A stretch of 64,000 nucleotides of DNA, taken from assembly GCF_032444005.1 (NCBI RefSeq), contig NC_091289.1:199702001-199766000 (forward strand), given 5' to 3'. Origin of the DNA: Ranitomeya imitator (taxonomy: Eukaryota). Every line of letters begins with the position of its first letter. Positions within the stretch are counted from its first letter, which is position 1. The position numbers were made by a program, and so were the translations under genes. A model generated the notes under the pieces. It had not been told where the DNA came from, did not search any database, and saw only the letters and a list, made by a program, of their open reading frames with translations. Shown here piece by piece: positions 11,401-58,499 of this stretch.

Positions 11401-11529
11401 GTAGGAGATGATAGCGGGAAACCCCGATGTGACAGATCCTCTCTTGGGCCGTGTTCACACTGTCAGTATTTCTCCGGAGCTGACAGCAGTGCAGCAGTGT
11501 ATTCTCAGATGCCGCCTTGCTGTATTTGG

Positions 11530-11543
11530 CCTGCAGGTGGCGC
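11530..11543 (+). promoter_or_regulatory. Single CTCF-like motif in the last samd13 intron
   Basis: CCTGCAGGTGGCGC, close to the CCASYAGRKGGCRS core; motif match only. Confidence 0.4.
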
Positions 11544-11675
11544 TCTCATCCAGCGTGTGACTGTGAGCAGTGATCCTGCAGATGCGGCCCCTGGCTCTAC
11601 GATCCCGCGGGGTCTCCGATCACCTTCTTCTCGTTTCCTTCCATTTATTGATCGTTTTTCTCTTTTTTCTATCAG

Positions 11676-18245: not shown

Positions 18246-18432
18246 CAGATGGCATCAAAGTTCAGCCCTTTGTAGGAGTCAAACTTCCATTTGCAGTTGA
18301 CGATGGTGGAGAAGCATCTGTCCTTCACCTCGGGGAGTGTTGTGTATTGATCTTTTATAAAACCTTCAAATCCGGACTGTGTCGTCTTCAGAATTCGCAG
18401 ATCTTTGATTCCAGAGTAAACGACGGGCTGAC
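18246..18432 (-). CDS. uox: Urate oxidase exon 5
   Basis: (G)[63 protein letters not shown]|gtaagt; 187 nt. Confidence 0.97.
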
Positions 18433-18552
18433 CTGTGGGGGGGACAGCAAAATGACGGCATAAGATGGCGGTGCGGAGACTACAACACCCAGAGGTCCCC
18501 AGCCCTCTCACACCAAGGACAACCAGACCTGGTCCTGATGGAGATATCCTAC

Positions 18553-18631
18553 CTCCTCGCTCCTGTTCTACTTCACAGAAATGGGTGCCCTCAGAGGAAT
18601 AGATAAAGGCATGAACGTGCTCCACTCCGTC
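18553..18631 (-). CDS. uox: Urate oxidase exon 4
   Basis: [27 protein letters not shown]|gtagga; 79 nt, phase 0/1. Confidence 0.95.
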
Positions 18632-18799
18632 CTGCATAAACAGAGGCACGAAGTCAGAAATGCATGAATTCCCTTATCTAAGCAGATGCAAAACGTCTGT
18701 CGTTCTGGCAGAGTTACCAAACTTGTGCACTCATCACGTCTACCCCTTAGTGTGCGACCAATCAGAGCCTCATATCACTGTACTTACAAGACAAAATGC

Positions 18800-21253
18800 T
18801 ATCATGTATCTCTGTATACAGGGAGCTCCCCCTAGTGGTGGCTGCAGACAGGATCTTATCATGTATCTCTGTATACAGGGAGCTCCCCCTAGTGGTGGCT
18901 GCAGACAGGATCTTATCATGTATCTCTGTATACAGGGAGCTCCCCCTAGTGATGGCTGCAGACAGGATCTTATCATGTATCTGTATACAGGGAGCTCCCC
19001 ATAGTGGTAGCTGCAGACAGGATCTTATCATGTATCTCTGTATACAGGGAGCTCCCCCTAGTGGTGACTGCAGACAGGATCTTATCATGTATCTCTGTAT
19101 ACAGGGAGCTCCCCCTAGTGGTGGCTGCAGACAGGATCTTATCATGTATCTCTGTATACAGGGAGCTCCCCCTAGTGGTGGCTGCAGACAGGATCTTATC
19201 ATGTATCTCTGTATACAGGGAGCTCCCCCTAGTGGTGCCTGCAGACATAATCTTATCATGTATCTCTGTATACAGGGAGCTCCCCCTAGTGGTGACTGCA
19301 GACAGGATCTTATCATGTATCTCTGTATACAGGGAGCTCCCCCTAGTGGTGGCTGCAGACAGGATCTTATCATGTATCTCTGTATACAGGGAGTTCCCCC
19401 TAGTGGTGGCTGCAGACAGGATCTTATCATGTATCTCTGTATACAGGGAGCTCCCCCTAGTAGTGGCTGTAGACAGGATCTTATCATGTATCTCTGTATA
19501 CAGGGAGCTCCCCCTAGTGGTGGCTGCAGACAGGATCTTATGTATCTCTGTATACAGGGAGCTCCCCCTAGTGGTGCCTGCAGACATAATCTTATCATGT
19601 ATCTCTGTATACAGGGAGCTCCCCCTAGTGGTGACTGCAGACAGGATCTTATCATGTATCTCTGTATACAGGGAGCTCCCCCTAGTGGTGGCTGCAGACA
19701 GGATCTTATCATGTATCTCTGTATACAGGGAGCTCCCCCTAGTGGTGCCTGCAGAAAGGATCTTATCATGTATCTCTGTATACAGGGAGCTCCCCCTAGT
19801 GGTGACTGCAGACAGGATCTTATCATGTATCTCTGTATACAGGGAGCTCCCCCTAGTGGTGGCTGCAGACACGATCTTATCATGTATCTCTGTATACAGG
19901 GAGCTCCCCCTAGTGGTGGCTGCAGACAGGATCTTATCATGTATCTCTGTATACAGGGAGCTCCCCCTAGTGGTGGCTGCAGTCAGGATCTTATCATGTA
20001 TCTCTGTATACAGGGAGCTCCCCCTAGTGGTGGCTGCAGTCAGGATCTTATCATGTATCTCTGTATACAGGGAGCTCCCCCTAGTGGTGGCTGCAGTCAG
20101 GATCTTATCATGTATCTCTGTATACAGGGAGCTCCCCCTAGTGGTGGCTGCAGTCAGGATCTTATCATGTATCTCTGTATACAGGGAGCTCCCCCTAGTG
20201 GTGACTGCAGACAGGATCTTATCATGTATCTCTGTATACAGGGAGCTCCCCCTAGTGGTGGCTGCAGACAGGATCTTATCATGTATCTCTGTATACAGGG
20301 AGCTCCCCCTAGTGGTGGCTGCAGAGAGGATCTTATCATGTATCTCTGTATACAGGGAGCTCCCCCTAGTGGTGGCTGCAGACAGTATCTTATCATGTAT
20401 CTCTATATACAGGGAGCTCCCCCTAGTGGTGGCTGCAGAGAGGATCTTATCATGTATCTCTGTACACAGGGAGCTCCCCCTAGTGGTGACTGCAGGCAGT
20501 ATCTTATCATGTATCTCTGTATACAGGGAGCTCCCCCTAGTGGTGGCTGCAGACAGGATCTTATCATGTATCTCTGTACACAGGGAGCTCCCCCTAGTGG
20601 TGGCTGCAGACAGGATCTTATCATGTATCTCTGTATACAGGGAGCTCCCCCTAGTGGTGGCTGCAGACAGGATCTTATCATGTATCTCTGTATACAGGGA
20701 GCCCCCCCTAGTGGTGGCTGCAGACAGAACCTTATCATGTATCTCTGTATACAGGGAGCTCCCCCTAGTGGTGTCTGCAGACAGGATATTATCATGTATC
20801 TCTGTATACAGGGAGCTCCCCCTAGTGGTGGCTGCAGACAGAATGTTACAATGTATCTCTGTATACAGGGAGCTCCCCCTAGTGGTGGCTGCAGACAGAA
20901 CCTTATCATGTATCTCTGTATACAGGGAGCTCCCCCTAGTGGTGACTGCAGACAGGATCTTATCATGTATCTCTGTACACAAGGAGCTCCCCCTAGTGGT
21001 GGCTGCAGACAGGATCTTATCATGTATCTCTGTATACAGGGAGCTCCCCCTAGTGGTGGCTGGAGACAGGATCCTATCATGTATCTCTGTATACAGGGAG
21101 CTCCCCCTAGTGGTGGCTGCAGACAGGATCTTATCATGTATCTCTGTATACAGGGAGCTCCCCCTAGTGGTGGCTGGAGACAGGATCCTATCATGTATCT
21201 CTGTATACAGGGAGCTCCCCCTAGTGGTGTCTGCAGACAGAATGTTACAATGT
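18800..21253. repeat. 57-bp satellite, left block (~43 copies), uox intron 3
   Basis: Unit TATCATGTATCTCTGTATACAGGGAGCTCCCCCTAGTGGTGGCTGCAGACAGGATCT. Confidence 0.98.
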
Positions 21254-22134
21254 TATTATTATTATTATTATTATTATTTATTGTTATAGCGCCATTTATT
21301 CCATGGCGCTTTACATGTGAGGAGGGGTATACATAATGAAAACAAGTACAATAATCTTAAACAATACAAGTCATAACTGGTACAGGAGGAATGAGGACCC
21401 TGCCCGCGAGGGCTCACAATCTACAAGGGATGGGTGAGAATACAGTAGGTGAGGGTAGAGATGGTCATGCAGCGGTTTGGTCGATCGGTGGTAGCTGCAG
21501 GTTGTAGGCTTGTCTGAAGAGGTGGGTCTTCAGGTTCTTTTTGAAGGTTTCGATGGTAGGCGAGAGTCTGATGTGTTGTGGTAGAGGGTTCCAGAGTAGG
21601 GGTGATACGCGAGAGAAATCTTGTATACGATTGTGGGAAGAGGAGATAAGAGGGGAGTAGAGTAGGAGATCTTGTGAGGATCGGAGGTTGCGGGTAGGTA
21701 AGTACCGGGAGACGAGGTCACAGATGTATGGAGGAGACAGGTTGTGGATGGCTTTGTACGTCATGGTTAGGGTTTTGTAGTGGAGTCTCTGGGCAATGGG
21801 GAGCCAGTGAAGGGATTGACAGAGGGGAGAGGCCGGGGAATAGCGGGGGGACAGGTGGATTAGTCGGGCAGCAGAGTTTAGAATAGATTGGAGGGGTGCG
21901 AGAGTGTTAGCGGGGAGGCCACAGAGCAGGAGGTTGCAGTAGTCAAGGCGAGAGATGATGAGGGCATGGACTAGGGTTTTTGCAGATTCATGGTTGAGGA
22001 ATGAACGGATTCGTGAAATATTTTTGAGTTGCAGTCGGCAGGAAGTGGAAAGGGCTTGGATATGTGGTTTGAAGGAGAGATCAGCGTCAAGGATTACCCC
22101 GAGGCAGCGAGCTTGTGGGACTGGGGAGAGTGGG
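21254..22134 (-). mobile_element. L2-clade LINE, 5'-truncated (~880 bp) with (TAA)n tail
   Basis: Uninterrupted frame ARCLGVILDADLSFKPHI...LIISRLDYCNLLLCGLP...LHWLP...FKKNLKTHLF (L2 ORF2 C-terminus); (TTA)n at 21254-21280 on +; ACAATGT at 21247-21253 and 22160-22166 is a candidate TSD. Confidence 0.93.
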
Positions 22135-25100
22135 CATGTATCTCTGTACAATGTATCTAACAATGTATCTCTGTATACAGGGAGCTCCCCCTAGTGGTGG
22201 CTGCAGACAGAACCTTATCATGTATCTCTGTATACAGGGAGCTCCCCCTAGCGGTGACTGCAGACAGGATCTTATCATGTATCTCTGTATACAGGGAGCT
22301 CCCCCTAGTGGTGGCTGCAGACAGGATCTTATGTATCTCTGTATACAGGGAGCTCCCCCTAGTGGTGCCTGCAGACAGGATCTTATCATGTATCTCTGTA
22401 TACAGGGAGCTCCCCCTAGTGGTGACTGCAGACAGGATCTTATCATGTATCTCTGTATACAGGGAGCTCCCCCTAGTGGTGGCTGCAGACACGATCTTAT
22501 CATGTATCTCTGTATACAGGGAGCTCCCCCTAGTGGTGGCTGCAGACAGGATCTTATCATGTATCTCTGTATACAGGGAGCTCCCCCTAGTGGTGGCTGC
22601 AGTCAGGATCTTATCATGTATCTCTGTATACAGGGAGCTCCCCCTAGTGGTGGCTGCAGTCAGGATCTTATCATGTATCTCTGTATACAGGGAGCTCCCC
22701 CTAGTGGTGGCTGCAGTCAGGATCTTATCATGTATCTCTGTATACAGGGAGCTCCCCCTAGTGGTGGCTGCAGTCAGGATCTTATCATGTATCTCTGTAT
22801 ACAGGGAGCTCCCCCTAGTGGTGACTGCAGACAGGATCTTATCATGTATCTCTGTATACAGGGAGCTCCCCCTAGTGGTGGCTGCAGACAGGATCTTATC
22901 ATGTATCTCTGTATACAGGGAGCTCCCCCTAGTGGTGGCTGCAGACAGGATCCTATCATGTATCTCTGTATACAGGGAGCTCCCCCTAGTGGTGGCTGCA
23001 GAGAGGATCTTATCATGTATCTCTGTACACAGGGAGCTCCCCCTAGTGGTGACTGCAGGCAGTATCTTATCATGTATCTCTGTATACAGGGAGCTCCCCC
23101 TAGTGGTGGCTGCAGACAGGATCTTATCATGTATCTCTGTACACAGGGAGCTCCCCCTAGTGGTGGCTGCAGACAGGATCTTATCATGTATCTCTGTATA
23201 CAGGGAGCTCCCCCTAGTGGTGGCTGCAGACAGGATCTTATCATGTATCTCTGTATACAGGGAGCCCCCCCTAGTGGTGGCTGCAGACAGAACCTTATCA
23301 TGTATCTCTGTATACAGGGAGCTCCCCCTAGTGGTGTCTGCAGACAGGATATTATCATGTATCTCTGTATACAGGGAGCTCCCCCTAGTGGTGGCTGCAG
23401 ACAGAATGTTACAATGTATCTCTGTATACAGGGAGCTCCCCCTAGTGGTGGCTGCAGACAGAACCTTATCATGTATCTCTGTATACAGGGAGCTCCCCCT
23501 AGTGGTGACTGCAGACAGGATCTTATCATGTATCTCTGTACACAAGGAGCTCCCCCTAGTGGTGGCTGCAGACAGGATCTTATCATGTATCTCTGTATAC
23601 AGGGAGCTCCCCCTAGTGGTGGCTGGAGACAGGATCCTATCATGTATCTCTGTATACAGGGAGCTCCCCCTAGTGGTGGCTGCAGACAGGATCTTATCAT
23701 GTATCTCTGTATACAGGGAGCTCCCCCTAGTGGTGGCTGGAGACAGGATCCTATCATGTATCTCTGTATACAGGGAGCTCCCCCTAGTGGTGTCTGCAGA
23801 CAGAATGTTACAATGTATCTCTGTATACAGGGAGCTCCCCCTAGTGGTGGCTGCAGACAGAACCTTATCATGTATCTCTGTATACAGGGAGCTCCCCCTA
23901 GTGGTGACTGCAGACAGGATCTTATCATGTATCTCTGTATACAGGGAGCTCCCCCTAGTGGTGGCTGCAGACAGGATCTTATCATGTATCTCTGTATACA
24001 GGGAGCTCCCCCTAGTGGTGACTGCAGACAGGATCCTATCATGTATCTCTGTATACAGGGAGCTCCCCCTAGTGGTGGCTGCAGACAGGATCTTATCATG
24101 TATCTCTGTATACAGGGAGCTCCCCCTAGTGGTGATTTCAGACAGGATCTTATCATGTATCTCTGTATACAGGGAGCTCCCCCTAGTGGTGGCTGCAGAC
24201 AGGATCTTATCATGTATCTCTGTATACAGGGAGCTCCCCCTAGTGGTGACTGCAGACAGGATCTTATCATGTATCTCTGTATACAGGGAGCTCCCCCTAG
24301 TGGTAGCTGCAGACAGGATCTTATCATGTATCTCTGTATACAGGGAGCTCCCCCTAGTGGTGACTGCAGACAGGATCTTATCATGTATCTCTGTATACAG
24401 GGAGCTCCCCCTAGTGGTAGCTGCAGACAGGATCTTATCATGTATCTCTGTATACAGGGAGCTCCCCCTAGTGGTGACTGCAGACAGGATCTTATGTATC
24501 TCTGTATACAGGGAGCTCCCCCTAGTGGTGACTGCAGACAGGATCTTATCATGTATCTCTGTATACAGGGAGCTCCCCCTAGTGGTGGCTGCAGACAGGA
24601 TCTTATCATGTATCTCTGTATACAGGGAGCTCCCCCTAGTGGTGACTGCAGACAGGATCTTATCATGTATCTCTGTATACAGGGAGCTCCCCCTAGTGGT
24701 GGCTGCAGACAGGATCTTATCATGTATCTCTGTATACAGGGAGCTCCCCCTAGTGGTGGTTGCAGACAGGATCTTATCATGTATCTCTGTATACAGGGAG
24801 CTCCCCCTAGTGGTGGCTGCAGACAGGATCTTATCATGTATCTCTGTATACAGGGAGCCCCCCCTAGTGGTGGCTGCAGACAGAACCTTATCATGTATGT
24901 CTGTATACAGGGAGCTCCCCCTAGTGGTGTCTGCAGACAGAATGTTACAATGTATCTCTGTATACAGGGAGCTCCCCCTAGTGGTGGCTGCAGACAGAAC
25001 CTTATCATGTATCTCTGTATACAGGGAGCTCCCCCTAGCGGTGACTGCAGACAGGATCTTATCATGTATCTCTGTATACAGGGAGCTCCCCCTAGTGGTG

Positions 25101-28100
25101 GCTGCAGACAGGATCCTATCATGTATCTCTGTATACAGGGAGCTCCCCCTAGTGGTGGATGCAGACAGGATCTTATCACGTATCTCTGTATACAGGGAGC
25201 TCCCCCTAGTGGTGACTGCAGACAGAATCTTATCATGTATCTCTGTATACAGGGAGCTCCCCCTAGTGGTGGCTGCAGACAGGATCTTATCATGTATCTC
25301 TGTATACAGGGAGCTCCCCCTAGTGGTGATTTCAGACAGGATCTTATCATGTATCTCTGTATACAGGGAGCTCCCCCTAGTGGTGGCTGCAGACAGGATC
25401 TTATCATGTATCTCTGTATACAGGGAGCTCCCCCTAGTGGTGACTGCAGACAGGATCTTATCATGTATCTCTGTATACAGGGAGCTCCCCCTAGTGGTAG
25501 CTGCAGACAGGATCTTATCATGTATCTCTGTATACAGGGAGCTCCCCCTAGTGGTGACTGCAGACAGGACCTTATGTATCTCTGTATACAGGGAGCTCCC
25601 CCTAGTGGTGACTGCAGACAGGATCTTATCATGTATCTCTGTATACAGGGAGCTCCCCCTAGTGGTGGCTGCAGACAGGATCTTATCATGTATCTCTGTA
25701 TACAGGGAGCTCCCCCTAGTGGTGACTGCAGACAGGATCTTATCATGTATTTCTGTATACAGGGAGCTCCCCCTAGTGGTGACTGCAGACAGGATCTTAT
25801 CATGCATCTCTGTATACAGGGAGCTCCCCCTAGTGGTGGCTGCAGACAGGATCTTATCATGTATCTCTGTATACAGGTAGCTCCCCCTAGTGGTGGCTGC
25901 AGACAGGATCTTATCACGTATCTCTGTATACAGGGAGCTCCCCCTAGTGGTGGCTGCAGACAGGATCTTATGTATCTCTGTATACAGGGAGCTCCCCCTA
26001 GTGGTGGCTGCAGACAGGATCTTATCATGTATCTCTGTATACAGGTAGCTCCCCCTAGTGGTGACTGCAGACAGGATCTTATCATGTATCTCTGTATACA
26101 GGGAGCTCCCCCTAGTGGTGGCTGCAGACAGGATCTTATCATGTATCTCTGTATACAGGGAGCTCCCCCTAGTGGTGGCTGCAGACAGGATCTTATCATG
26201 TATCTCTGTATACAGGGAGCTCCCCCTAGTGGTGACTGCAGACAGGATCTTATCATGTATCTCTGTATACAGGGAGCTCCCCCTAGTGGTGGCTGCAGAG
26301 AGGATCTTATCATGTATCTCTGTATACAGGGAGCTCCCCCTAGTGGTGGCTGCAGACAGTATCTTATCATGTATCTCTATATACAGGGAGCTCCCCCTAG
26401 TGGTGGCTGCAGAGAGGATCTTATCATGTATCTCTGTACACAGGGAGCTCCCCCTAGTGGTGACTGCAGGCAGTATCTTATCATGTATCTCTGTATACAG
26501 GGAGCTCCCCCTAGTGGTGGCTGCAGACAGGATCTTATCATGTATCTCTGTACACAGGGAGCTCCCCCTAGTGGTGGCTGCAGACAGGATCTTATGTATC
26601 TCTGTATACAGGGAGCTCCCCCTAGTGGTGCCTGCAGACAGGATCTTATCATGTATCTCTGTATACAGGGAGCTCCCCCTAGTGGTGACTGCAGACAGGA
26701 TCTTATCATGTATCTCTGTATACAGGGAGCTCCCCCTAGTGGTGGCTGCAGACACGATCTTATCATGTATCTCTGTATACAGGGAGCTCCCCCTAGTGGT
26801 GGCTGCAGACAGGATCTTATCATGTATCTCTGTATACAGGGAGCTCCCCCTAGTGGTGGCTGCAGTCAGGATCTTATCATGTATCTCTGTATACAGGGAG
26901 CTCCCCCTAGTGGTGGCTGCAGTCAGGATCTTATCATGTATCTCTGTATACAGGGAGCTCCCCCTAGTGGTGGCTGCAGTCAGGATCTTATCATGTATCT
27001 CTGTATACAGGGAGCTCCCCCTAGTGGTGGCTGCAGTCAGGATCTTATCATGTATCTCTGTATACAGGGAGCTCCCCCTAGTGGTGACTGCAGACAGGAT
27101 CTTATCATGTATCTCTGTATACAGGGAGCTCCCCCTAGTGGTGGCTGCAGACAGGATCTTATCATGTATCTCTGTATACAGGGAGCTCCCCCTAGTGGTG
27201 GCTGCAGACAGGATCCTATCATGTATCTCTGTATACAGGGAGCTCCCCCTAGTGGTGGCTGCAGAGAGGATCTTATCATGTATCTCTGTACACAGGGAGC
27301 TCCCCCTAGTGGTGACTGCAGGCAGTATCTTATCATGTATCTCTGTATACAGGGAGCTCCCCCTAGTGGTGGCTGCAGACAGGATCTTATCATGTATCTC
27401 TGTATACAGGGAGCTCCCCCTAGTGGTGGCTGCAGTCAGGATCTTATCATGTATCTCTGTATACAGGGAGCTCCCCCTAGTGGTGGCTGCAGTCAGGATC
27501 TTATCATGTATCTCTGTATACAGGGAGCTCCCCCTAGTGGTGGCTGCAGTCAGGATCTTATCATGTATCTCTGTATACAGGGAGCTCCCCCTAGTGGTGG
27601 CTGCAGTCAGGATCTTATCATGTATCTCTGTATACAGGGAGCTCCCCCTAGTGGTGACTGCAGACAGGATCTTATCATGTATCTCTGTATACAGGGAGCT
27701 CCCCCTAGTGGTGGCTGCAGACAGGATCTTATCATGTATCTCTGTATACAGGGAGCTCCCCCTAGTGGTGGCTGCAGACAGGATCCTATCATGTATCTCT
27801 GTATACAGGGAGCTCCCCCTAGTGGTGGCTGCAGAGAGGATCTTATCATGTATCTCTGTACACAGGGAGCTCCCCCTAGTGGTGACTGCAGGCAGTATCT
27901 TATCATGTATCTCTGTATACAGGGAGCTCCCCCTAGTGGTGGCTGCAGACAGGATCTTATCATGTATCTCTGTACACAGGGAGCTCCCCCTAGTGGTGGC
28001 TGCAGACAGGATCTTATCATGTATCTCTGTATACAGGGAGCTCCCCCTAGTGGTGGCTGCAGACAGGATCTTATCATGTATCTCTGTATACAGGGAGCCC

Positions 28101-31100
28101 CCCCTAGTGGTGGCTGCAGACAGAACCTTATCATGTATCTCTGTATACAGGGAGCTCCCCCTAGTGGTGTCTGCAGACAGGATATTATCATGTATCTCTG
28201 TATACAGGGAGCTCCCCCTAGTGGTGGCTGCAGACAGAATGTTACAATGTATCTCTGTATACAGGGAGCTCCCCCTAGTGGTGGCTGCAGACAGAACCTT
28301 ATCATGTATCTCTGTATACAGGGAGCTCCCCCTAGTGGTGACTGCAGACAGGATCTTATCATGTATCTCTGTACACAAGGAGCTCCCCCTAGTGGTGGCT
28401 GCAGACAGGATCTTATCATGTATCTCTGTATACAGGGAGCTCCCCCTAGTGGTGGCTGGAGACAGGATCCTATCATGTATCTCTGTATACAGGGAGCTCC
28501 CCCTAGTGGTGGCTGCAGACAGGATCTTATCATGTATCTCTGTATACAGGGAGCTCCCCCTAGTGGTGGCTGGAGACAGGATCCTATCATGTATCTCTGT
28601 ATACAGGGAGCTCCCCCTAGTGGTGTCTGCAGACAGAATGTTACAATGTATCTCTGTATACAGGGAGCTCCCCCTAGTGGTGGCTGCAGACAGAACCTTA
28701 TCATGTATCTCTGTATACAGGGAGCTCCCCCTAGTGGTGACTGCAGACAGGATCTTATCATGTATCTCTGTATACAGGGAGCTCCCCCTAGTGGTGGCTG
28801 CAGACAGGATCTTATCATGTATCTCTGTATACAGGGAGCTCCCCCTAGTGGTGACTGCAGACAGGATCCTATCATGTATCTCTGTATACAGGGAGCTCCC
28901 CCTAGTGGTGGCTGCAGACAGGATCTTATCATGTATCTCTGTATACAGGGAGCTCCCCCTAGTGGTGATTTCAGACAGGATCTTATCATGTATCTCTGTA
29001 TACAGGGAGCTCCCCCTAGTGGTGGCTGCAGACAGGATCTTATCATGTATCTCTGTATACAGGGAGCTCCCCCTAGTGGTGACTGCAGACAGGATCTTAT
29101 CATGTATCTCTGTATACAGGGAGCTCCCCCTAGTGGTAGCTGCAGACAGGATCTTATCATGTATCTCTGTATACAGGGAGCTCCCCCTAGTGGTGACTGC
29201 AGACAGGATCTTATGTATCTCTGTATACAGGGAGCTCCCCCTAGTGGTGACTGCAGACAGGATCTTATCATGTATCTCTGTATACAGGGAGCTCCCCCTA
29301 GTGGTGGCTGCAGACAGGATCTTATCATGTATCTCTGTATACAGGGAGCTCCCCCTAGTGGTGACTGCAGACAGGATCTTATCATGTATCTCTGTATACA
29401 GGGAGCTCCCCCTAGTGGTGGCTGCAGACAGGATCTTATCATGTATCTCTGTATACAGGGAGCTCCCCCTAGTGGTGGTTGCAGACAGGATCTTATCATG
29501 TATCTCTGTATACAGGGAGCTCCCCCTAGTGGTGGCTGCAGACAGGATCTTATCATGTATCTCTGTATACAGGGAGCCCCCCCTAGTGGTGGCTGCAGAC
29601 AGAACCTTATCATGTATGTCTGTATACAGGGAGCTCCCCCTAGTGGTGTCTGCAGACAGAATGTTACAATGTATCTCTGTATACAGGGAGCTCCCCCTAG
29701 TGGTGGCTGCAGACAGAACCTTATCATGTATCTCTGTATACAGGGAGCTCCCCCTAGCGGTGACTGCAGACAGGATCTTATCATGTATCTCTGTATACAG
29801 GGAGCTCCCCCTAGTGGTGACTGCAGACAGGATCTTATCATGTATCTCTGTATACAGGGAGCTCCCCCTAGTGGTGGCTGCAGACAGGATCCTATCATGT
29901 ATCTCTGTATACAGGGAGCTCCCCCTAGTGGTGGATGCAGACAGGATCTTATCACGTATCTCTGTATACAGGGAGCTCCCCCTAGTGGTGACTGCAGACA
30001 GAATCTTATCATGTATCTCTGTATACAGGGAGCTCCCCCTAGTGGTGGCTGCAGACAGGATCTTATCATGTATCTCTGTATACAGGGAGCTCCCCCTAGT
30101 GGTGATTTCAGACAGGATCTTATCATGTATCTCTGTATACAGGGAGCTCCCCCTAGTGGTGGCTGCAGACAGGATCTTATCATGTATCTCTGTATACAGG
30201 GAGCTCCCCCTAGTGGTGACTGCAGACAGGATCTTATCATGTATCTCTGTATACAGGGAGCTCCCCCTAGTGGTAGCTGCAGACAGGATCTTATCATGTA
30301 TCTCTGTATACAGGGAGCTCCCCCTAGTGGTGACTGCAGACAGGACCTTATGTATCTCTGTATACAGGGAGCTCCCCCTAGTGGTGACTGCAGACAGGAT
30401 CTTATCATGTATCTCTGTATACAGGGAGCTCCCCCTAGTGGTGGCTGCAGACAGGATCTTATCATGTATCTCTGTATACAGGGAGCTCCCCCTAGTGGTG
30501 ACTGCAGACAGGATCTTATCATGTATTTCTGTATACAGGGAGCTCCCCCTAGTGGTGACTGCAGACAGGATCTTATCATGCATCTCTGTATACAGGGAGC
30601 TCCCCCTAGTGGTGGCTGCAGACAGGATCTTATCATGTATCTCTGTATACAGGTAGCTCCCCCTAGTGGTGGCTGCAGACAGGATCTTATCACGTATCTC
30701 TGTATACAGGGAGCTCCCCCTAGTGGTGGCTGCAGACAGGATCTTATGTATCTCTGTATACAGGGAGCTCCCCCTAGTGGTGGCTGCAGACAGGATCTTA
30801 TCATGTATCTCTGTATACAGGTAGCTCCCCCTAGTGGTGACTGCAGACAGGATCTTATCATGTATCTCTGTATACAGGGAGCTCCCCCTAGTGGTGGCTG
30901 CAGACAGGATCTTATCATGTATCTCTGTATACAGGGAGCTCCCCCTAGTGGTGGCTGCAGACAGGATCTTATCATGTATCTCTGTATACAGGGAGCTCCC
31001 CCTAGTGGTGACTGCAGACAGGATCTTATCATGTATCTCTGTATACAGGGAGCTCCCCCTAGTGGTGGCTGCAGAGAGGATCTTATCATGTATGTCTGTA

Positions 31101-34100
31101 TACAGGGAGCTCCCCCTAGTGGTGGCTGCAGACAGTATCTTATCATGTATCTCTATATACAGGGAGCTCCCCCTAGTGGTGGCTGCAGAGAGGATCTTAT
31201 CATGTATCTCTGTACACAGGGAGCTCCCCCTAGTGGTGACTGCAGGCAGTATCTTATCATGTCTCTCTGTATACAGGGAGCTCCCCCTAGTGGTGGCTGC
31301 AGACAGGATCTTATCATGTATCTCTGTACACAGGGAGCTCCCCCTAGTGGTGGCTGCAGACAGGATCTTATCATGTATCTCTGTATACAGGGAGCTCCCC
31401 CTAGTGGTGGCTGCAGACAGGATCTTATCATGTATCTCTGTATACAGGGAGCCCCCCCTAGTGGTGGCTGCAGACAGAACCTTATCATGTATCTCTGTAT
31501 ACAGGGAGCTCCCCCTAGTGGTGTCTGCAGACAGGATATTATCATGTATCTCTGTATCCAGGGAGCTCCCCCTAGTGGTGGCTGCAGACAGAATGTTACA
31601 ATGTATCTCTGTATACAGGGAGCTCCCCCTAGTGGTGGCTGCAGACAGAACCTTATCATGTATCTCTGTATACAGGGAGCTCCCCCTAGTGGTGACTGCA
31701 GACAGGATCTTATCATGTATCTCTGTACACAAGGAGCTCCCCCTAGTGGTGGCTGCAGACAGGATCTTATCATGTATCTCTGTATACAGGGAGCTCCCCC
31801 TAGTGGTGGCTGGAGACAGGATCCTATCATGTATCTCTGTATACAGGGAGCTCCCCCTAGTGGTGGCTGCAGACAGGATCTTATCATGTATCTCTGTATA
31901 CAGGGAGCTCCCCCTAGTGGTGGCTGGAGACAGGATCCTATCATGTATCTCTGTATACAGGGAGCTCCCCCTAGTGGTGTCTGCAGACAGAATGTTACAA
32001 TGTATCTCTGTATACAGGGAGCTCCCCCTAGTGGTGGCTGCAGACAGAACCTTATCATGTATCTCTGTATACAGGGAGCTCCCCCTAGCGGTGACTGCAG
32101 ACAGGATCTTATCATGTATCTCTGTATACAGGGAGCTCCCCCTAGTGGTGGCTGCAGACAGGATCTTATCATGTATCTCTGTATACAGGGAGCTCCCCCT
32201 AGTGGTGGCTGCAGACAGGATCTTATCATGTATCTCTGTATACAGGGAGCTCCCCCTAGTGGTGACTGCAGACAGGATCCTATCATGTATCTCTGTATAC
32301 AGGGAGCTCCCCCTAGTGGTGGCTGCAGACAGGATCTTATCATGTATCTCTGTATACAGGGAGCTCCCCCTAGTGGTGATTTCAGACAGGATCTTATCAT
32401 GTATCTCTGTATACAGGGAGCTCCCCCTAGTGGTGGCTGCAGACAGGATCTTATCATGTATCTCTGTATACAGGGAGCTCCCCCTAGTGGTGACTGCAGA
32501 CAGGATCTTATCATGTATCTCTGTATACAGGGAGCTCCCCCTAGTGGTAGCTGCAGACAGGATCTTATCATGTATCTCTGTATACAGGGAGCTCCCCCTA
32601 GTGGTGACTGCAGACAGGATCTTATGTATCTCTGTATACAGGGAGCTCCCCCTAGTGGTGACTGCAGACAGGATCTTATCATGTATCTCTGTATACAGGG
32701 AGCTCCCCCTAGTGGTGGCTGCAGACAGGATCTTATCATGTATCTCTGTATACAGGGAGCTCCCCCTAGTGGTGACTGCAGACAGGATCTTATCATGTAT
32801 CTCTGTATACAGGGAGCTCCCCCTAGTGGTGGCTGCAGACAGGATCTTATCATGTATCTCTGTATACAGGGAGCTCCCCCTAGTGGTGGTTGCAGACAGG
32901 ATCTTATCATGTATCTCTGTATACAGGGAGCTCCCCCTAGTGGTGGCTGCAGACAGGATCTTATCATGTATCTCTGTATACAGGGAGCCCCCCCTAGTGG
33001 TGGCTGCAGACAGAACCTTATCATGTATCTCTGTATACAGGGAGCTCCCCCTAGTGGTGTCTGCAGACAGAATGTTACAATGTATCTCTGTATACAGGGA
33101 GCTCCCCCTAGTGGTGGCTGCAGACAGAACCTTATCATGTATCTCTGTATACAGGGAGCTCCCCCTAGCGGTGACTGCAGACAGGATCTTATCATGTATC
33201 TCTGTATACAGGGAGCTCCCCCTAGTGGTGACTGCAGACAGGATCTTATCATGTATCTCTGTATACAGGGAGCTCCCCCTAGTGGTGGCTGCAGACAGGA
33301 TCCTATCATGTATCTCTGTATACAGGGAGCTCCCCCTAGTGGTGGATGCAGACAGGATCTTATCATGTATCTCTGTATACAGGGAGCTCCCCCTAGTGGT
33401 GACTGCAGACAGAATCTTATCATGTATCTCTGTATACAGGGAGCTCCCCCTAGTGGTGGCTGCAGACAGGATCTTATCATGTATCTCTGTATACAGGGAG
33501 CTCCCCCTAGTGGTGATTTCAGACAGGATCTTATCATGTATCTCTGTATACAGGGAGCTCCCCCTAGTGGTGGCTGCAGACAGGATCTTATCATGTATCT
33601 CTGTATACAGGGAGCTCCCCCTAGTGGTGACTGCAGACAGGATCTTATCATGTATCTCTGTATACAGGGAGCTCCCCCTAGTGGTAGCTGCAGACAGGAT
33701 CTTATCATGTATCTCTGTATACAGGGAGCTCCCCCTAGTGGTGGCTGCAGACAGGATCTTATCATGTATCTCTGTATACAGGGAGCTCCCCCTAGTGGTG
33801 ACTGCAGACAGGATCCTATCATGTATCTCTGTATACAGGGAGCTCCCCCTAGTGGTGGCTGCAGACAGGATCTTATCATGTATCTCTGTATACAGGGAGC
33901 TCCCCCTAGTGGTGATTTCAGACAGGATCTTATCATGTATCTCTGTATACAGGGAGCTCCCCCTAGTGGTGGCTGCAGACAGGATCTTATCATGTATCTC
34001 TGTATACAGGGAGCTCCCCCTAGTGGTGACTGCAGACAGGATCTTATCATGTATCTCTGTATACAGGGAGCTCCCCCTAGTGGTAGCTGCAGACAGGATC

Positions 34101-37100
34101 TTATCATGTATCTCTGTATACAGGGAGCTCCCCCTAGTGGTGACTGCAGACAGGATCTTATGTATCTCTGTATACAGGGAGCTCCCCCTAGTGGTGACTG
34201 CAGACAGGATCTTATCATGTATCTCTGTATACAGGGAGCTCCCCCTAGTGGTGGCTGCAGACAGGATCTTATCATGTATCTCTGTATACAGGGAGCTCCC
34301 CCTAGTGGTGGCTGCAGACAGGATCTTATCATGTATCTCTGTATACAGGGAGCTCCCCCTAGTGGTGGTTGCAGACAGGATCTTATCATGTATCTCTGTA
34401 TACAGGGAGCTCCCCCTAGTGGTGGCTGCAGACAGGATCTTATCATGTATCTCTGTATACAGGGAGCTCCCCCTAGTGGTGACTGCAGACAGGATCTTAT
34501 CATGTATCTCTGTATACAGGGAGCTCCCCCTAGTGGTGGCTGCAGACAGGATCTTATCATGTATCTCTGTATACAGGGAGCTCCCCCTAGTGGTGGTTGC
34601 AGACAGGATCTTATCATGTATCTCTGTATACAGGGAGCTCCCCCTAGTGGTGGCTGCAGACAGGATCTTATCATGTATCTCTGTATACAGGGAGCCCCCC
34701 CTAGTGGTGGCTGCAGACAGAACCTTATCATGTATGTCTGTATACAGGGAGCTCCCCCTAGTGGTGTCTGCAGACAGAATGTTACAATGTATCTCTGTAT
34801 ACAGGGAGCTCCCCCTAGTGGTGGCTGCAGACAGAACCTTATCATGTATCTCTGTATACAGGGAGCTCCCCCTAGCGGTGACTGCAGACAGGATCTTATC
34901 ATGTATCTCTGTATACAGGGAGCTCCCCCTAGTGGTGACTGCAGACAGGATCTTATCATGTATCTCTGTATACAGGGAGCTCCCCCTAGTGGTGGCTGCA
35001 GACAGGATCCTATCATGTATCTCTGTATACAGGGAGCTCCCCCTAGTGGTGGATGCAGACAGGATCTTATCATGTATCTCTGTATACAGGGAGCTCCCCC
35101 TAGTGGTGACTGCAGACAGAATCTTATCATGTATCTCTGTATACAGGGAGCTCCCCCTAGTGGTGGCTGCAGACAGGATCTTATCATGTATCTCTGTATA
35201 CAGGGAGCTCCCCCTAGTGGTGATTTCAGACAGGATCTTATCATGTATCTCTGTATACAGGGAGCTCCCCCTAGTGGTGACTGCAGACAGGATCTTATCA
35301 TGTATCTCTGTATACAGGGAGCTCCCCCTAGTGGTAGCTGCAGACAGGATCTTATCATGTATCTCTGTATACAGGGAGCTCCCCCTAGTGGTGACTGCAG
35401 ACAGGATCTTATGTATCTCTGTATACAGGGAGCTCCCCCTAGTGGTGACTGCAGACAGGATCTTATCATGTATCTCTGTATACAGGGAGCTCCCCCTAGT
35501 GGTGGCTGCAGACAGGATCTTATCATGTATCTCTGTATACAGGGAGCTCCCCCTAGTGGTGACTGCAGACAGGATCTTATCATGTATTTCTGTATACAGG
35601 GAGCTCCCCCTAGTGGTGACTGCAGACAGGATCTTATCATGCATCTCTGTATACAGGGAGCTCCCCCTAGTGGTGGCTGCAGACAGGATCTTATCATGTA
35701 TCTCTGTATACAGGTAGCTCCCCCTAGTGGTGGCTGCAGACAGGATCTTATCACGTATCTCTGTATACAGGGAGCTCCCCCTAGTGGTGGCTGCAGACAG
35801 GATCTTATGTATCTCTGTATACAGGGAGCTCCCCCTAGTGGTGGCTGCAGACAGGATCTTATCATGTATCTCTGTATACAGGTAGCTCCCCCTAGTGGTG
35901 ACTGCAGACAGGATCTTATCATGTATCTCTGTATACAGGGAGCTCCCCCTAGTGGTGGCTGCAGACAGGATCTTATCATGTATCTCTGTATACAGGGAGC
36001 TCCCCCTAGTGGTGACTGCAGACAGGATCTTATCATGTATCTCTGTATACAGGGAGCTCCCCCTAGTGGTGGCTGCAGAGAGGATCTTATCATGTATCTC
36101 TGTATACAGGGAGCTCCCCCTAGTGGTGGCTGCAGACAGTATCTTATCATGTATCTCTATATACAGGGAGCTCCCCCTAGTGGTGGCTGCAGAGAGGATC
36201 TTATCATGTATCTCTGTACACAGGGAGCTCCCCCTAGTGGTGACTGCAGGCAGTATCTTATCATGTATCTCTGTATACAGGGAGCTCCCCCTAGTGGTGG
36301 CTGCAGACAGGATCTTATCATGTATCTCTGTACACAGGGAGCTCCCCCTAGTGGTGGCTGCAGACAGGATCTTATCATGTATCTCTGTATACAGGGAGCT
36401 CCCCCTAGTGGTGGCTGCAGACAGGATCTTATCATGTATCTCTGTATACAGGGAGCCCCCCCTAGTGGTGGCTGCAGACAGAACCTTATCATGTATCTCT
36501 GTATACAGGGAGCTCCCCCTAGTGGTGTCTGCAGACAGGATATTATCATGTATCTCTGTATACAGGGAGCTCCCCCTAGTGGTGGCTGCAGACAGAATGT
36601 TACAATGTATCTCTGTATACAGGGAGCTCCCCCTAGTGGTGGCTGCAGACAGAACCTTATCATGTATCTCTGTATACAGGGAGCTCCCCCTAGTGGTGAC
36701 TGCAGACAGGATCTTATCATGTATCTCTGTACACAAGGAGCTCCCCCTAGTGGTGGCTGCAGACAGGATCTTATCATGTATCTCTGTATACAGGGAGCTC
36801 CCCCTAGTGGTGGCTGGAGACAGGATCCTATCATGTATCTCTGTATACAGGGAGCTCCCCCTAGTGGTGGCTGCAGACAGGATCTTATCATGTATCTCTG
36901 TATACAGGGAGCTCCCCCTAGTGGTGGCTGGAGACAGGATCCTATCATGTATCTCTGTATACAGGGAGCTCCCCCTAGTGGTGTCTGCAGACAGAATGTT
37001 ACAATGTATCTCTGTATACAGGGAGCTCCCCCTAGTGGTGGCTGCAGACAGAACCTTATCATGTATCTCTGTATACAGGGAGCTCCCCCTAGCGGTGACT

Positions 37101-39712
37101 GCAGACAGGATCTTATCATGTATCTCTGTATACAGGGAGCTCCCCCTAGTGGTGGCTGCAGACAGGATCTTATCATGTATCTCTGTATACAGGGAGCTCC
37201 CCCTAGTGGTGGCTGCAGACAGGATCTTATCATGTATCTCTGTATACAGGGAGCTCCCCCTAGTGGTGACTGCAGACAGGATCCTATCATGTATCTCTGT
37301 ATACAGGGAGCTCCCCCTAGTGGTGGCTGCAGACAGGATCTTATCATGTATCTCTATACAGGGAGCTCCCCCTAGTGGTGATTTCAGACAGGATCTTATC
37401 ATGTATCTCTGTATACAGGGAGCTCCCCCTAGTGGTGGCTGCAGACAGGATCTTATCATGTATCTCTGTATACAGGGAGCTCCCCCTAGTGGTGACTGCA
37501 GACAGGATCTTATCATGTATCTCTGTATACAGGGAGCTCCCCCTAGTGGTAGCTGCAGACAGGATCTTATCATGTATCTCTGTATACAGGGAGCTCCCCC
37601 TAGTGGTGACTGCAGACAGGATCTTATGTATCTCTGTATACAGGGAGCTCCCCCTAGTGGTGACTGCAGACAGGATCTTATCATGTATCTCTGTATACAG
37701 GGAGCTCCCCCTAGTGGTGGCTGCAGACAGGATCTTATCATGTATCTCTGTATACAGGGAGCTCCCCCTAGTGGTGACTGCAGACAGGATCTTATCATGT
37801 ATCTCTGTATACAGGGAGCTCCCCCTAGTGGTGGCTGCAGACAGGATCTTATCATGTATCTCTGTATACAGGGAGCTCCCCCTAGTGGTGGTTGCAGACA
37901 GGATCTTATCATGTATCTCTGTATACAGGGAGCTCCCCCTAGTGGTGGCTGCAGACAGGATCTTATCATGTATCTCTGTATACAGGGAGCCCCCCCTAGT
38001 GGTGGCTGCAGACAGAACCTTATCATGTATGTCTGTATACAGGGAGCTCCCCCTAGTGGTGTCTGCAGACAGAATGTTACAATGTATCTCTGTATACAGG
38101 GAGCTCCCCCTAGTGGTGGCTGCAGACAGAACCTTATCATGTATCTCTGTATACAGGGAGCTCCCCCTAGCGGTGACTGCAGACAGGATCTTATCATGTA
38201 TCTCTGTATACAGGGAGCTCCCCCTAGTGGTGACTGCAGACAGGATCTTATCATGTATCTCTGTATACAGGGAGCTCCCCCTAGTGGTGGCTGCAGACAG
38301 GATCCTATCATGTATCTCTGTATACAGGGAGCTCCCCCTAGTGGTGGATGCAGACAGGATCTTATCATGTATCTCTGTATACAGGGAGCTCCCCCTAGTG
38401 GTGACTGCAGACAGAATCTTATCATGTATCTCTGTATACAGGGAGCTCCCCCTAGTGGTGGCTGCAGACAGGATCTTATCATGTATCTCTGTATACAGGG
38501 AGCTCCCCCTAGTGGTGATTTCAGACAGGATCTTATCATGTATCTCTGTATACAGGGAGCTCCCCCTAGTGGTGGCTGCAGACAGGATCTTATCATGTAT
38601 CTCTGTATACAGGGAGCTCCCCCTAGTGGTGACTGCAGACAGGATCTTATCATGTATCTCTGTATACAGGGAGCTCCCCCTAGTGGTAGCTGCAGACAGG
38701 ATCTTATCATGTATCTCTGTATACAGGGAGCTCCCCCTAGTGGTGGCTGCAGACAGGATCTTATCATGTATCTCTGTATACAGGGAGCTCCCCCTAGTGG
38801 TGACTGCAGACAGGATCTTATGTATCTCTGTATACAGGGAGCTCCCCCTAGTGGTGACTGCAGACAGGATCTTATCATGTATCTCTGTATACAGGGAGCT
38901 CCCCCTAGTGGTGGCTGCAGACAGGATCTTATCATGTATCTCTGTATACAGGGAGCTCCCCCTAGTGGTGACTGCAGACAGGATCTTATCATGTATTTCT
39001 GTATACAGGGAGCTCCCCCTAGTGGTGACTGCAGACAGGATCTTATCATGCATCTCTGTATACAGGGAGCTCCCCCTAGTGGTGGCTGCAGACAGGATCT
39101 TATCATGTATCTCTGTATACAGGTAGCTCCCCCTAGTGGTGGCTGCAGACAGGATCTTATCACGTATCTCTGTATACAGGTAGCTCCCCCTAGTGGTGGC
39201 TGCAGACAGGATCTTATCACGTATCTCTGTATACAGGGAGCTCCCCCTAGTGGTGGCTGCAGACAGGATCTTATGTATCTCTGTATACAGGGAGCTCCCC
39301 CTAGTGGTGGCTGCAGACAGGATCTTATCATGTATCTCTGTATACAGGGAGCTCCCCCTAGTGGTGGCTGCAGACAGGATCTTATCATGTATCTCTGTAT
39401 ACAGGGAGCTCCCCCTAGTGGTGACTGCAGACAGGATCTTATCATGTATCTCTGTATACAGGGAGCTCCCCCTAGTGGTGACTGCAGACAGGATCTTATC
39501 ATGTATCTCTGTATACAGGGAGCTCCCCCTAGTGGTGGCTGCAGACAGGATCTTATCATGTATCTCTGTATACAGGGAGCTCCCCCTAGTGGTGACTGCA
39601 GACAGGATCTTATCATGCATGTCTGTATACAGGGAGCTCCCTCTAGTGGTGACTGCAGACAGGATCTTATCATGTATCTCTGTATACAGGGAGCTCCCCC
39701 TAGTGGTGACTG
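22135..39712. repeat. 57-bp satellite, right block (~308 copies) with higher-order structure
   Basis: Same unit; 54-bp (-CAT) variants and diagnostic SNV series recur every ~3.3-5 kb; one 55-bp monomer near 37355. Confidence 0.98.
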
Positions 39713-39795
39713 TTCTGCTTTATCTTTTTTTTCTGTAGTGTATTTTGAAACAATTTTCAGAAAACTTAAGCCTTTGATCAAGTATCTACAAATAC

Positions 39796-39912
39796 CTTTG
39801 TAAAGCGTCTCCAGGGGGCTTCTTCAATGTAGGTCTTTGCTCTTGTCACATGACTGAAGTATGTGAGGAAATGATTACAAATCTCCAGAGAGAAATCCTC
39901 AATGGTGTTTAT
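39796..39912 (-). CDS. uox: Urate oxidase exon 3
   Basis: TTGCACAG|INTIEDFSLEICNHFLTYFSHVTRAKTYIEEAPWRRFTK|gtattt; 117 nt. Confidence 0.96.
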
Positions 39913-40124
39913 CTGTGCAATAAAATAAGATATAAAGTCATTGATGCGGATGACGGCCTGGAGACGATATAATCCGACTATCAAAGGCGACAGAAATGTA
40001 ATAAATTGGGACCTGAGTGTTAATGATCCTCGTGTGGTGACAGTTACAGGTGTGGACTGTATTGGCTGCCACCAGAGAGCACCAGCATACACATTCAGTA
40101 AACACAAATATGACTAATTCTCAC

Positions 40125-58317: not shown

Positions 58318-58499
58318 ACCGGAATAGATAATGACGATGCTATCGAAAGATACAAGCGGTGGAGACATCATCCCGGGTGAGACGCGAGTGGAGACGCCTC
58401 GGGCCAAACTCCAGGCCGTGGACTTCACCACATGTTTCCATTTCCCTCTCGACTTCTTCCAAGAGACAACACTTTTTATGTTTCTGTTAATATAACCGT

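What the first reader, a model, noticed from the sequence alone, without database searches (positions are those of the whole stretch)
18800..39712. ~350 tandem, co-oriented, CpG-free CTCF-like motifs fill uox intron 3
Seen: every 57-bp monomer reads CCACCACTAGGGGGAGCTC on the minus strand. Established: the CTCF core is CCASYAGRKGGCRS (JASPAR-like TGGCCACCAGGGGGCGCTA). The only core mismatch is C12>A, which removes the CpG, and the consensus monomer has no CpG at all. Seen qualitatively: most monomer variants fall in the adjacent TGGCTGCAGACAGGATC segment, and several core variants stay motif-compatible (CCGCTAGGGGGAGC, CCACTAGAGGGAGC). Inference: a 20-kb methylation-insensitive CTCF/cohesin array inside a liver enzyme gene could act as a directional loop-extrusion barrier or Pol II pause zone, separating samd13 from the uox/dnase2b/ppil1 promoters, with strength tuned by copy number. 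Related single motifs occur at 61604-61617 and in the ppil1 3' repeat.
Basis: partly seen in the sequence, partly recalled or inferred. Interest (0 to 1): 0.72.

Follow-up and report, generated by a model that had tools for sequence, protein, structure and literature searches.

The report
Satellite block with CTCF-like motifs
A frog uricase gene intron is almost entirely filled by 352 copies of a 57-base repeat that each carry a strong match to the CTCF binding motif. The repeat is one block of a satellite present in at least hundreds of thousands of copies across the genome, so a purpose-built insulator at this gene is unlikely and CTCF binding is untested.

Summary
There are 352 head-to-tail 57-bp units at 18800-21247 and 22163-39712, split by a 915-bp LINE-like insertion. 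All carry CCACCACTAGGGGGAGCTC on the minus strand. The consensus has no CpG, and the array has 18 CpGs in 20 kb. The array fills 98.8% of uox intron 3 (18632-39795) and leaves both splice sites intact.

Public DNA contigs show single-copy depth of about 10 in the flank and 3.6-4.9 million on the units. They also show 21,434 contigs and hundreds of different junctions. The unit therefore belongs to a genome-wide satellite of roughly 1e5-1e6 units, and this locus holds about 0.1% or less of them. A species about 5% diverged has the same array edge.

Low variation is not specific to the CTCF core, because it spans unit positions 12-40. Family-wide, two of the four common variants lie inside the core.

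The scan found what appears to be this satellite before on other DNA (s1-307380). My reading is a passive satellite block grown by unequal crossing-over. CTCF occupancy is possible but unproven.

The parts
18800..21247 (-). 57-bp satellite array, part 1 (43 units). The CTCF-like 19-mer lies on the minus strand, in the same sense as uox.
   Evidence: TRF, pattern search, unit parsing. The left edge is confirmed by public contigs of organisms A and C, which run from the unique flank into the first unit (records 1, 17, 25).
21248..22162 (-). 915-bp insertion inside the array. It is probably a 5'-truncated non-LTR (CR1/L2-like) retrotransposon 3' end with a (TAA)n tail.
   Evidence: Sequence. There is a 231-aa open frame at 21468-22160 on the minus strand. 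Pfam gives no hit, so the identity rests on pattern recall only.
22163..39712 (-). 57-bp satellite array, part 2 (309 units). It is built of multi-unit blocks.
   Evidence: TRF. Identical runs of 15-32 units recur at offsets of 58-261 units.
18632..39795 (-). uox intron 3 (21,164 bp). The array plus insertion make up 98.8% of it. 83 bp remain after the donor and 168 bp before the acceptor.
   Evidence: Splice contexts AAG|GTATTT and TTTATGCAG|GAC. An RNA contig of organism B joins exon 4 to exon-3 letters at 18633 (table 7).
39796..39912 (-). uox exon 3 (INTIEDF...APWRRFTK)
   Evidence: Translation.
18553..18631 (-). uox exon 4 (DGVEHVHAF...EVEQERGG)
   Evidence: Translation. The stop-free stretch that holds exons 4 and 5 hits Pfam Uricase at E 3e-19; the match itself lies on the exon-5 part. 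RNA depth in X13 covers only the exons.
61593..61617 (+). Single copy resembling the unit's motif plus its GTCTGCAG flank (22 of 25 nt identical). The CTCF-type hit is at 61601(+), 17.0 bits.
   Evidence: blastn-short E = 0.13, PWM scan. The similarity is marginal.

Best explanation
This is one block (352 units, 20.9 kb including a LINE fragment) of an abundant, dispersed 57-bp satellite family of this frog lineage. The block sits in uox intron 3.

Shown:
- The tandem structure.
- The family's very high copy number and its many different junctions.
- The same array edge in a species about 5% diverged.
- The intact uox exons and splice sites.

Inferred:
- A seed of the family came to lie in the intron before those species split.
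- The block then grew and is reshuffled by unequal crossing-over or replication slippage, which copies runs of 15-32 units at a time. The window is 62% tandem arrays, which is the kind of recombination-prone, repeat-dense DNA described for frog extended subtelomeres.
- The array is transcribed as part of the uox pre-mRNA and removed with the intron, with no designed role at this gene.

Each unit carries a strong, CpG-free, single-orientation match to the CTCF motif. That match is a property of the whole family. Whether CTCF occupies it is unknown. If it does, any barrier effect at uox is a by-product of the satellite and not an adaptation of this locus.
For: Family abundance. In one search, run X5 (DNA, organism A) shows flank depth 9.84 against a summed depth of 3.6-4.9 million over the units. 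21,434 contigs were laid, and there are hundreds of loose-end classes with low agreement, which means many different junctions. The ratio gives at least about 3.7e5 units, against 352 here. Run X16 (organism C) differs by 31 letters and 6 gaps over the 575 nt laid on the flank. It has a contig ending 25 nt into the first unit and a depth ratio of about 1.1-1.6e5.

Growth pattern. Identical runs of up to 32 units recur within the array.

Repeat context. 62% of the window is tandem arrays from 19 families. Bredeson et al. 2024 (PMC10794172) report that 10.7% of X. tropicalis chromosomes are tandem arrays. They attribute expansion to unequal crossing-over in recombination-rich extended subtelomeres. 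They also report enrichment of ACAG, AGGG and TGGG; the unit contains ACAG twice and AGGG.

Gene integrity. uox is intact from exon 2 to the final ...SKL stop. RNA contigs of organism B cover exons 4 and 5 at depths of 13,000-68,000, give no intron depth, and join exon 4 to exon 3.

No core-specific constraint.
Against: The motif match is far stronger than chance for a single unit: 5e-5 in composition-matched shuffles.

A second repeat family in this window (51408-51783) also carries a CTCF-like motif, and earlier scan notes list several more such arrays in this genome. The association of CTCF-like motifs with tandem arrays may therefore not be accidental.

Family-wide, subfamilies share a constant block (unit positions about 12 to 45-51) that contains the motif, and they differ in a linker of about 20 bp (table 7). 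This pattern is compatible with a bound protein.

The copy-number figure comes from summed contig depths, which the tool itself warns are not a copy number. Array length and the right-hand edge were not checked against reads.
Confidence: 0.6

Rival explanations
1. The satellite units are genuine CTCF binding sites. A fraction of the 352 units is occupied. All motifs point the same way (minus strand), so the block would stall cohesin arriving from the low-coordinate side (samd13 and the uox 3' half). It could then pair with forward sites such as 11527(+). This gives a directional boundary or a Pol II slowing zone inside uox, but as a family-wide property.
For: The motif scores 18.85 bits, p about 2.5e-7, and 350 of 352 units score at least 14 bits. 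Chance is 5e-5 per unit in shuffles. The motif has no CpG, so direct methylation of the motif cannot block binding. A mammalian CTCF motif marks convergent TAD borders in X. tropicalis, and CTCF knock-down disrupts TADs there (PMC8270788). Some human satellites carry CTCF motifs, with binding signal reported at rDNA arrays (10.64898/2026.07.18.739380). The constant block shared by subfamilies contains the motif.
Against: There are no binding data. With at least about 1e5 sites, the family would be comparable in number to the CTCF molecules in a nucleus (my recollection for mammalian cells), so most units cannot be occupied. Sites 57 bp apart leave no room for nucleosomes if filled. Human alpha-satellite higher-order repeats with enriched motifs gave no DiMeLo-seq signal. 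CTCF and Rad21 are barely detectable in frog liver. Motif position 15 is A, which is C in about 80% of matrix sites. Core variation is no lower than in the adjacent non-motif segment.
Confidence: 0.22
2. The motif is the cause of the arrays and not their purpose. Amphibians lack PRDM9, and in such genomes breaks may fall in nucleosome-free, factor-bound sites. A CTCF-occupied site would then attract breaks and unequal exchange, so units that contain such a site would be the ones that expand into mini- and satellite arrays.
For: Amphibians lack prdm9, and recombination correlates with satellite density (PMC10794172). Strong CTCF sites are reported as double-strand-break hotspots in human cells (PMC11040008 abstract). 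Two of the 19 repeat families in this window carry CTCF-like motifs, against about 0.05 expected. Earlier scan notes list several independent CTCF-motif arrays in this genome. Those notes are leads only.
Against: The window was picked because of this motif, so the count is post hoc. First-stage readers look for CTCF motifs in particular. G-run-rich composition raises chance matches. There is no genome-wide count against a composition-matched null and no recombination map for this frog.
Confidence: 0.1
3. The constant block (palindrome CTGTATACAG plus GGGAGCTCCC and the flanking letters) serves another purpose. It could be a site for a different DNA-binding protein, or a satellite RNA. On this reading the resemblance to CTCF is incidental.
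For: The low-variation zone (unit positions 12-40) and the block shared by subfamilies (about 12 to 45-51) both extend well beyond the CTCF core. The unit has two 10-bp palindromes. RNA contigs of organism B hold unit sequence at a summed depth of 9,000-62,000, while the unique part of intron 3 has none. Most of that RNA therefore comes from other loci.
Against: No candidate factor was identified. The single-strand fold of the unit is no better than shuffles (z = -0.22). Summed depth over at least 1e5 units can be reached by very low transcription per unit.
Confidence: 0.08

Closest known systems
Dispersed satellite and minisatellite arrays of frog extended subtelomeres (Bredeson et al. 2024, PMC10794172)
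   Same: Both show dense tandem arrays of units tens of bp long and growth by unequal exchange. Both contain the ACAG and AGGG tetramers. The families are shared among related frogs. Arrays lie in and around genes.
   Different: That paper describes other species and other units, for example a 52-bp SINE/tRNA-V-derived unit. It reports no CTCF-type motif in them. The chromosomal position of this window relative to a telomere is unknown.
Human gamma satellite and other primate satellites enriched in CTCF motifs (10.64898/2026.07.18.739380)
   Same: In both cases tandem satellite units carry CTCF motif matches, and a barrier role has been proposed.
   Different: Gamma satellite has GC-rich units of about 215 bp with partly methylated CpGs and sits near centromeres. 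It has a few hundred motifs per Mb. This array has one CpG-free motif per 57 bp (about 17,500 per Mb) in a gene intron.
CTCF-bound macrosatellites DXZ4 and FIRRE (PMC3491370)
   Same: Both are tandem repeats with one CTCF site per unit in a single orientation. Both are candidate architectural anchors.
   Different: Those are single-locus arrays with kb-sized units and demonstrated, epigenetically regulated CTCF binding. This one is a genome-wide family of 57-bp units with no binding data.
Retrotransposon-borne CTCF site waves (B2 SINE in rodents; from my own knowledge, Schmidt et al. 2012)
   Same: In both, a repeat family multiplies a strong CTCF motif to very high copy number within one lineage.
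   Different: B2 copies are dispersed single insertions made by retrotransposition. Here the copies are tandem, and the array edges show no transposon hallmarks.

Membership tests
Satellite DNA family (dispersed, high-copy tandem repeat) | Head-to-tail units of constant length with high identity | tested here: met
   57-bp period, 352 units, 95% matches.
Satellite DNA family (dispersed, high-copy tandem repeat) | Many copies at many loci in the genome | tested here: met
   Summed depth of 3.6-4.9 million against 9.84 in the single-copy flank, 21,434 contigs, and hundreds of different loose ends in a DNA run of the same organism. The copy figure is rough.
Satellite DNA family (dispersed, high-copy tandem repeat) | Shared with related species | tested here: met
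   Organism C (flank about 5% diverged) and organism B both hold the unit in quantity. Organism C has the same array edge.
CTCF binding site | Match to the core motif at a stringent threshold | tested here: met
   18.85 of 26.06 bits, p about 2.5e-7. The only mismatch among the high-information positions is A at matrix position 15.
CTCF binding site | Occupancy by CTCF in cells or in vitro | not testable with these tools
   No ChIP, CUT&RUN or footprinting data were accessible. All runs were offered only as contigs.
CTCF binding site | Stronger conservation of the core than of the flanks | tested here: not met
   The low-variation zone is unit positions 12-40. The minimum-window test gives P = 0.08, and variant compatibility gives P = 0.11. 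Family-wide common variants lie at unit positions 31 and 32, inside the core.
CTCF-bound macrosatellite (DXZ4/FIRRE type) | Single-locus array of kb-sized units | tested here: not met
   The unit is 57 bp and the family is genome-wide.
Transposon-borne CTCF site | Unit lies inside a mobile element with target-site duplication, terminal repeats or a tail | tested here: inconclusive
   The array edges show no duplication or terminal repeat. One single copy at 61593-61617 shares 22 of 25 nt with the unit (E = 0.13). No inverted repeat spans it.
Frog extended-subtelomere tandem arrays | Repeat-dense, GC-raised region enriched in ACAG, AGGG and TGGG | tested here: met
   62% of the window is tandem arrays. 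The unit holds ACAG twice and AGGG on both strands.
Frog extended-subtelomere tandem arrays | Location within the terminal tens of Mb of a chromosome | not testable with these tools
   The window's chromosomal position is not given.

The most novel reading that the evidence does not exclude
This frog lineage carries a satellite of 1e5-1e6 strong, CpG-free, methylation-proof CTCF sites that really bind CTCF. On this reading the family acts genome-wide, either as a CTCF/cohesin sink or as the glue of the repeat-rich chromosome ends that cluster in frog nuclei. Blocks inside genes, such as this one in uox, would then be local directional barriers whose strength follows copy number.
Probability: 0.12. 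Interest if true: 0.8.

Novelty: new member of a known kind. Interest (0 to 1): 0.35.

Why it matters
At this locus the finding is ordinary. It is a satellite block in an intron of an intact, spliced gene.

The family is of more interest. A lineage-specific satellite that places a strong, CpG-free CTCF motif every 57 bp, hundreds of thousands of times, is a natural test of two questions. The first is whether motif strength alone recruits CTCF in repetitive DNA. The second is what very large numbers of extra sites do to a limited CTCF pool and to genome folding.

I found no paper that describes this unit. The scan had already met what appears to be the same family on other DNA (s1-307380).

Tried and rejected
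- Hairpin or cruciform-driven instability. The single-strand DNA fold of two units is no better than shuffles (z = -0.22).
- Coding potential. 57 is a multiple of 3 and four of the six frames of the unit are open. This is mechanical, and the array is intronic.
- Core-specific selection. The raw binomial test on the 14-bp core (6 of 55 variant types, P = 0.01) does not survive the sliding-window correction (P = 0.08). The variants are also not independent, because blocks are duplicated.
- Canonical upstream CTCF module. The TGCAG next to the core sits only 3 nt from it. From my recollection of the two-part motif, the usual gap is 9-10 nt, so I do not count it.
- CpG loss as the origin of the C-to-A core mismatch. 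Deamination would give TG or CA, not GGAGC, so there is no sign that the unit derives from a canonical GGCGC site.
- Other copies in public collections. An exact 20-mer gave nothing in metagenome contigs. Two 16-mers gave nothing in the paper library. The by-sequence search of scan notes was blank.
- Pfam on the insertion's open frame gave no hit.
- The species name was not tested here. 'Poison frog' comes from earlier scan notes only.


Full report
Observation.

Tandem Repeats Finder reports a 57-bp period at 18800-21247 (43.0 copies) and 22163-39712 (308.7 copies), both with 95% matches. The 19-mer GAGCTCCCCCTAGTGGTGG is found 352 times at up to 2 mismatches. Every match is on the + strand, and shuffles give none. 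All 352 motifs therefore read CCACCACTAGGGGGAGCTC on the minus strand.

Parsing the units gives 333 of exactly 57 bp, 16 of 54 bp, 2 of 55 bp, and one that holds a 915-bp insertion. There are 54 distinct unit types (48 among the 57-bp units).

The consensus is TATCATGTATCTCTGTATACAGGGAGCTCCCCCTAGTGGTGGCTGCAGACAGGATCT and has no CpG. The array as a whole has 18 CpGs in 20 kb (o/e 0.01-0.02). The non-array part of the window has o/e 0.66, and most neighbouring arrays have 0.3-2.0. Two other arrays in the window are also CpG-poor.

Motif strength.

The column sums of 908-913 are as I recall them, but this remains a recalled matrix. The unit motif scores 18.85 of a maximum 26.06 bits, with an exact p of about 2.5e-7. 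350 of 352 units score at least 14 bits, all on the minus strand. The only mismatch among the high-information positions is A at matrix position 15, where C holds about 80% of sites.

Dinucleotide-preserving shuffles of the unit reach 18.85 bits in 1 of 20,000 trials and 14 bits in 0.25%. The match is therefore not a trivial chance event for one repeat family.

Gene context.

Uricase (PF01014) matches lie on the minus strand on both sides of the array. There is a SAM-domain exon at 11.65-11.8 kb (+), a DNase II exon at 56.4-56.8 kb (+), and a cyclophilin-like open frame at 51904-52521 (-).

Exon 3 of uox is 39796-39912 and ends ...APWRRFTK|GTATTT. Exon 4 is 18553-18631 and starts TTTATGCAG|GACGGA. 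Intron 3 is 18632-39795, which is 21,164 bp. The array plus its insertion make up 98.8% of the intron. It starts 83 bp after the donor and ends 168 bp before the acceptor. The last exon ends with the peroxisomal signal ...SKL, so the gene looks intact. The motif strand is the sense strand of uox.

What the array is.

The single read-laying run was placed on the left edge, 18250-19030.

- In a DNA run of the same organism (X5), the unique flank has depth 9.84. The units have a summed depth of 3.6-4.9 million from 21,434 contigs. There are hundreds of loose-end classes whose consensus agreement is only about 0.5, which means many different junctions. Each k-mer of a de Bruijn assembly belongs to one contig, so the ratio suggests at least about 3.7e5 units per genome. 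The tool warns that summed depth is not a copy number, so I take it only as an order of magnitude (1e5-1e6). The 352 units here are about 0.1% or less of the family.
- In organism C, the flank differs by 31 letters and 6 gaps over the 575 nt laid. A 1,550-nt contig runs through exons 5 and 4 and stops 25 nt into the first unit. The array edge is therefore shared and predates the split. The depth ratio there is about 1.1-1.6e5.
- Organism B (X13) behaves as RNA. Exons 4 and 5 are covered at 13,000-68,000, and the unique intron parts are not covered at all. A loose end at 18633 carries exon-3 letters, so intron 3 is spliced out.
- Organism B shares four of the five exon-5 differences with organism C, so by parsimony it probably carries the array too. 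This is an inference.
- Unit sequence is present in that RNA run at a summed depth of 9,000-62,000. The unique intron has no depth, so nearly all of this RNA must come from other loci of the family.

This agrees with an earlier scan note on another piece of the same genome (s1-307380). That note describes a 57-bp unit, 1e5-8e5 units per genome and several related frogs. I reached the same result independently, but I could not compare the two unit sequences directly.

How it grew.

Written as a string of unit types, the array contains identical runs of 15-32 units (up to 1.8 kb at 100% identity) that recur at offsets of 58-261 units. This is the signature of unequal exchange of multi-unit blocks.

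A 915-bp insertion at 21248-22162 has a 231-aa open frame on the minus strand and a (TAA)n tail at its low-coordinate end. It looks like the 3' part of a CR1/L2-type LINE, although Pfam gives no hit. It occurs once, so no block containing it has been copied since it landed.

62% of the window is tandem arrays from 19 families. Bredeson et al. 2024 describe exactly such DNA in frogs. They report that 10.7% of X. tropicalis chromosomes are tandem arrays, concentrated in about 20-30 Mb recombination-rich extended subtelomeres. They attribute expansion to unequal crossing-over and report enrichment of ACAG, AGGG and TGGG. They also note that amphibians lack prdm9 (PMC10794172).

Is the CTCF core under constraint?

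Counting variant types instead of letters is more appropriate, because blocks are duplicated. On that count the 14-bp core has 6 of 55 types (binomial P = 0.01). However, every 14-nt window starting at positions 12-23 is about as poor in variants. The minimum-window test gives P = 0.08. The observed single-substitution variants of the 19-mer are not significantly more motif-compatible than all possible ones (P = 0.11).

Family-wide, the positions that vary in 10% or more of units in organism A are 42 and 53 (outside the core) and 31 and 32 (inside the G-run of the core) (table 3).

On the other side, contigs of diverged subfamilies match this unit only from about position 12 to about 45-51 (table 7). 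The family therefore has a constant block of 34-40 bp and a variable linker of about 20 bp. The constant block comprises the palindrome CTGTATACAG, the palindrome GGGAGCTCCC and the CTCF-like 19-mer. This is compatible with a bound protein, but it is not specific to CTCF.

Interpretation.

The locus-level part does not fit a unit that exists at many other places, and nothing tests binding.

Points in favour of real CTCF sites:
- The motif is strong and has no CpG.
- A mammalian CTCF motif marks convergent TAD borders in X. tropicalis, and knock-down of CTCF and Rad21 disrupts TADs there (PMC8270788).
- Several human satellites are enriched in CTCF motifs, with binding signal at rDNA arrays.

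Points against:
- The number of sites is on the order of the CTCF molecules in a nucleus (my recollection for mammalian cells).
- A 57-bp spacing would exclude nucleosomes if the sites were filled.
- Human alpha-satellite arrays with enriched motifs gave no DiMeLo-seq signal.
- Frog liver was reported to have barely detectable CTCF and Rad21 and weak TADs.

If the block were bound, the minus-strand orientation would block cohesin coming from the low-coordinate side. It would also form a convergent pair with the strong forward site at 11527 (20.7 bits). This is descriptive only.

A further idea is that the motif promotes expansion, because breaks fall in factor-bound, nucleosome-free sites in a genome without PRDM9. 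It is suggested by a second CTCF-like repeat at 51408-51783 (13.7 bits) and by several independent CTCF-motif arrays in earlier notes. The window and those notes were selected for the motif, so this needs a genome-wide census.

Dead ends.

- No special single-strand structure.
- No match in metagenome contigs or in the paper library.
- No literature on poison-frog satellites with this unit.
- The single copy at 61593-61617 shares 22 of 25 nt with the unit, including the GTCTGCAG flank, but only at E = 0.13. No transposon structure surrounds it.

Verdict.

This is a real and striking array with a correct description. It is best read as a passive block of a lineage-wide satellite whose unit happens to carry, or has come to carry, a strong CTCF-type motif. 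I class it as a new member of a known kind. Interest is modest at the locus level. It would be higher if the family were shown to bind CTCF.

Noticed in passing
window 1-64000: 62% of the window consists of tandem arrays from 19 different families with units of 13-134 bp. Most are CpG-rich (o/e 0.3-2.0). Three are CpG-poor: this 57-bp array, 57361-58319 and 54098-55733.
   Followed up: partly
window 21248-22162: A 915-bp insertion lies inside the array. It has a 231-aa open frame on the minus strand (21468-22160) and a (TAA)n tail, and is probably the 3' part of a CR1/L2-type LINE. Pfam gives no hit. It occurs once, so it postdates the last block duplication that covered its site.
   Followed up: partly
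window 11527-11545 (+), 40066-40084 (+), 61601-61619 (+), 61677-61695 (-): These are strong single CTCF-matrix hits outside the array (20.7, 16.6, 17.0 and 16.8 bits). There are 15 hits of at least 10 bits in the 43 kb outside the array, against about 4 expected under a uniform background.
   Followed up: partly
window 51408-51783: A 38/134-bp repeat next to the ppil1-like open frame carries CTGTCACTAGGGGGCTCCG (13.7 bits). It shares the 10-mer CACTAGGGGG with the 57-bp unit.
   Followed up: partly
window 3-1010 (-): An open frame with a reverse-transcriptase domain (RVT_1, E 1e-15) runs off the window start. It is a LINE fragment.
   Followed up: no
window 18800-19030, in run X13 (RNA of a related species): Satellite-unit RNA reaches a summed depth (9,000-62,000) similar to that of the highly expressed uox exons, although the unique part of intron 3 has no depth. 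The family is therefore transcribed from other loci. The strand and the source are unknown.
   Followed up: no
window 18812-18830 within each unit (unit positions 13-31): Two adjacent perfect 10-bp palindromes, CTGTATACAG and GGGAGCTCCC, lie in the constant half of the unit. The second overlaps the G-run of the CTCF-like motif.
   Followed up: partly
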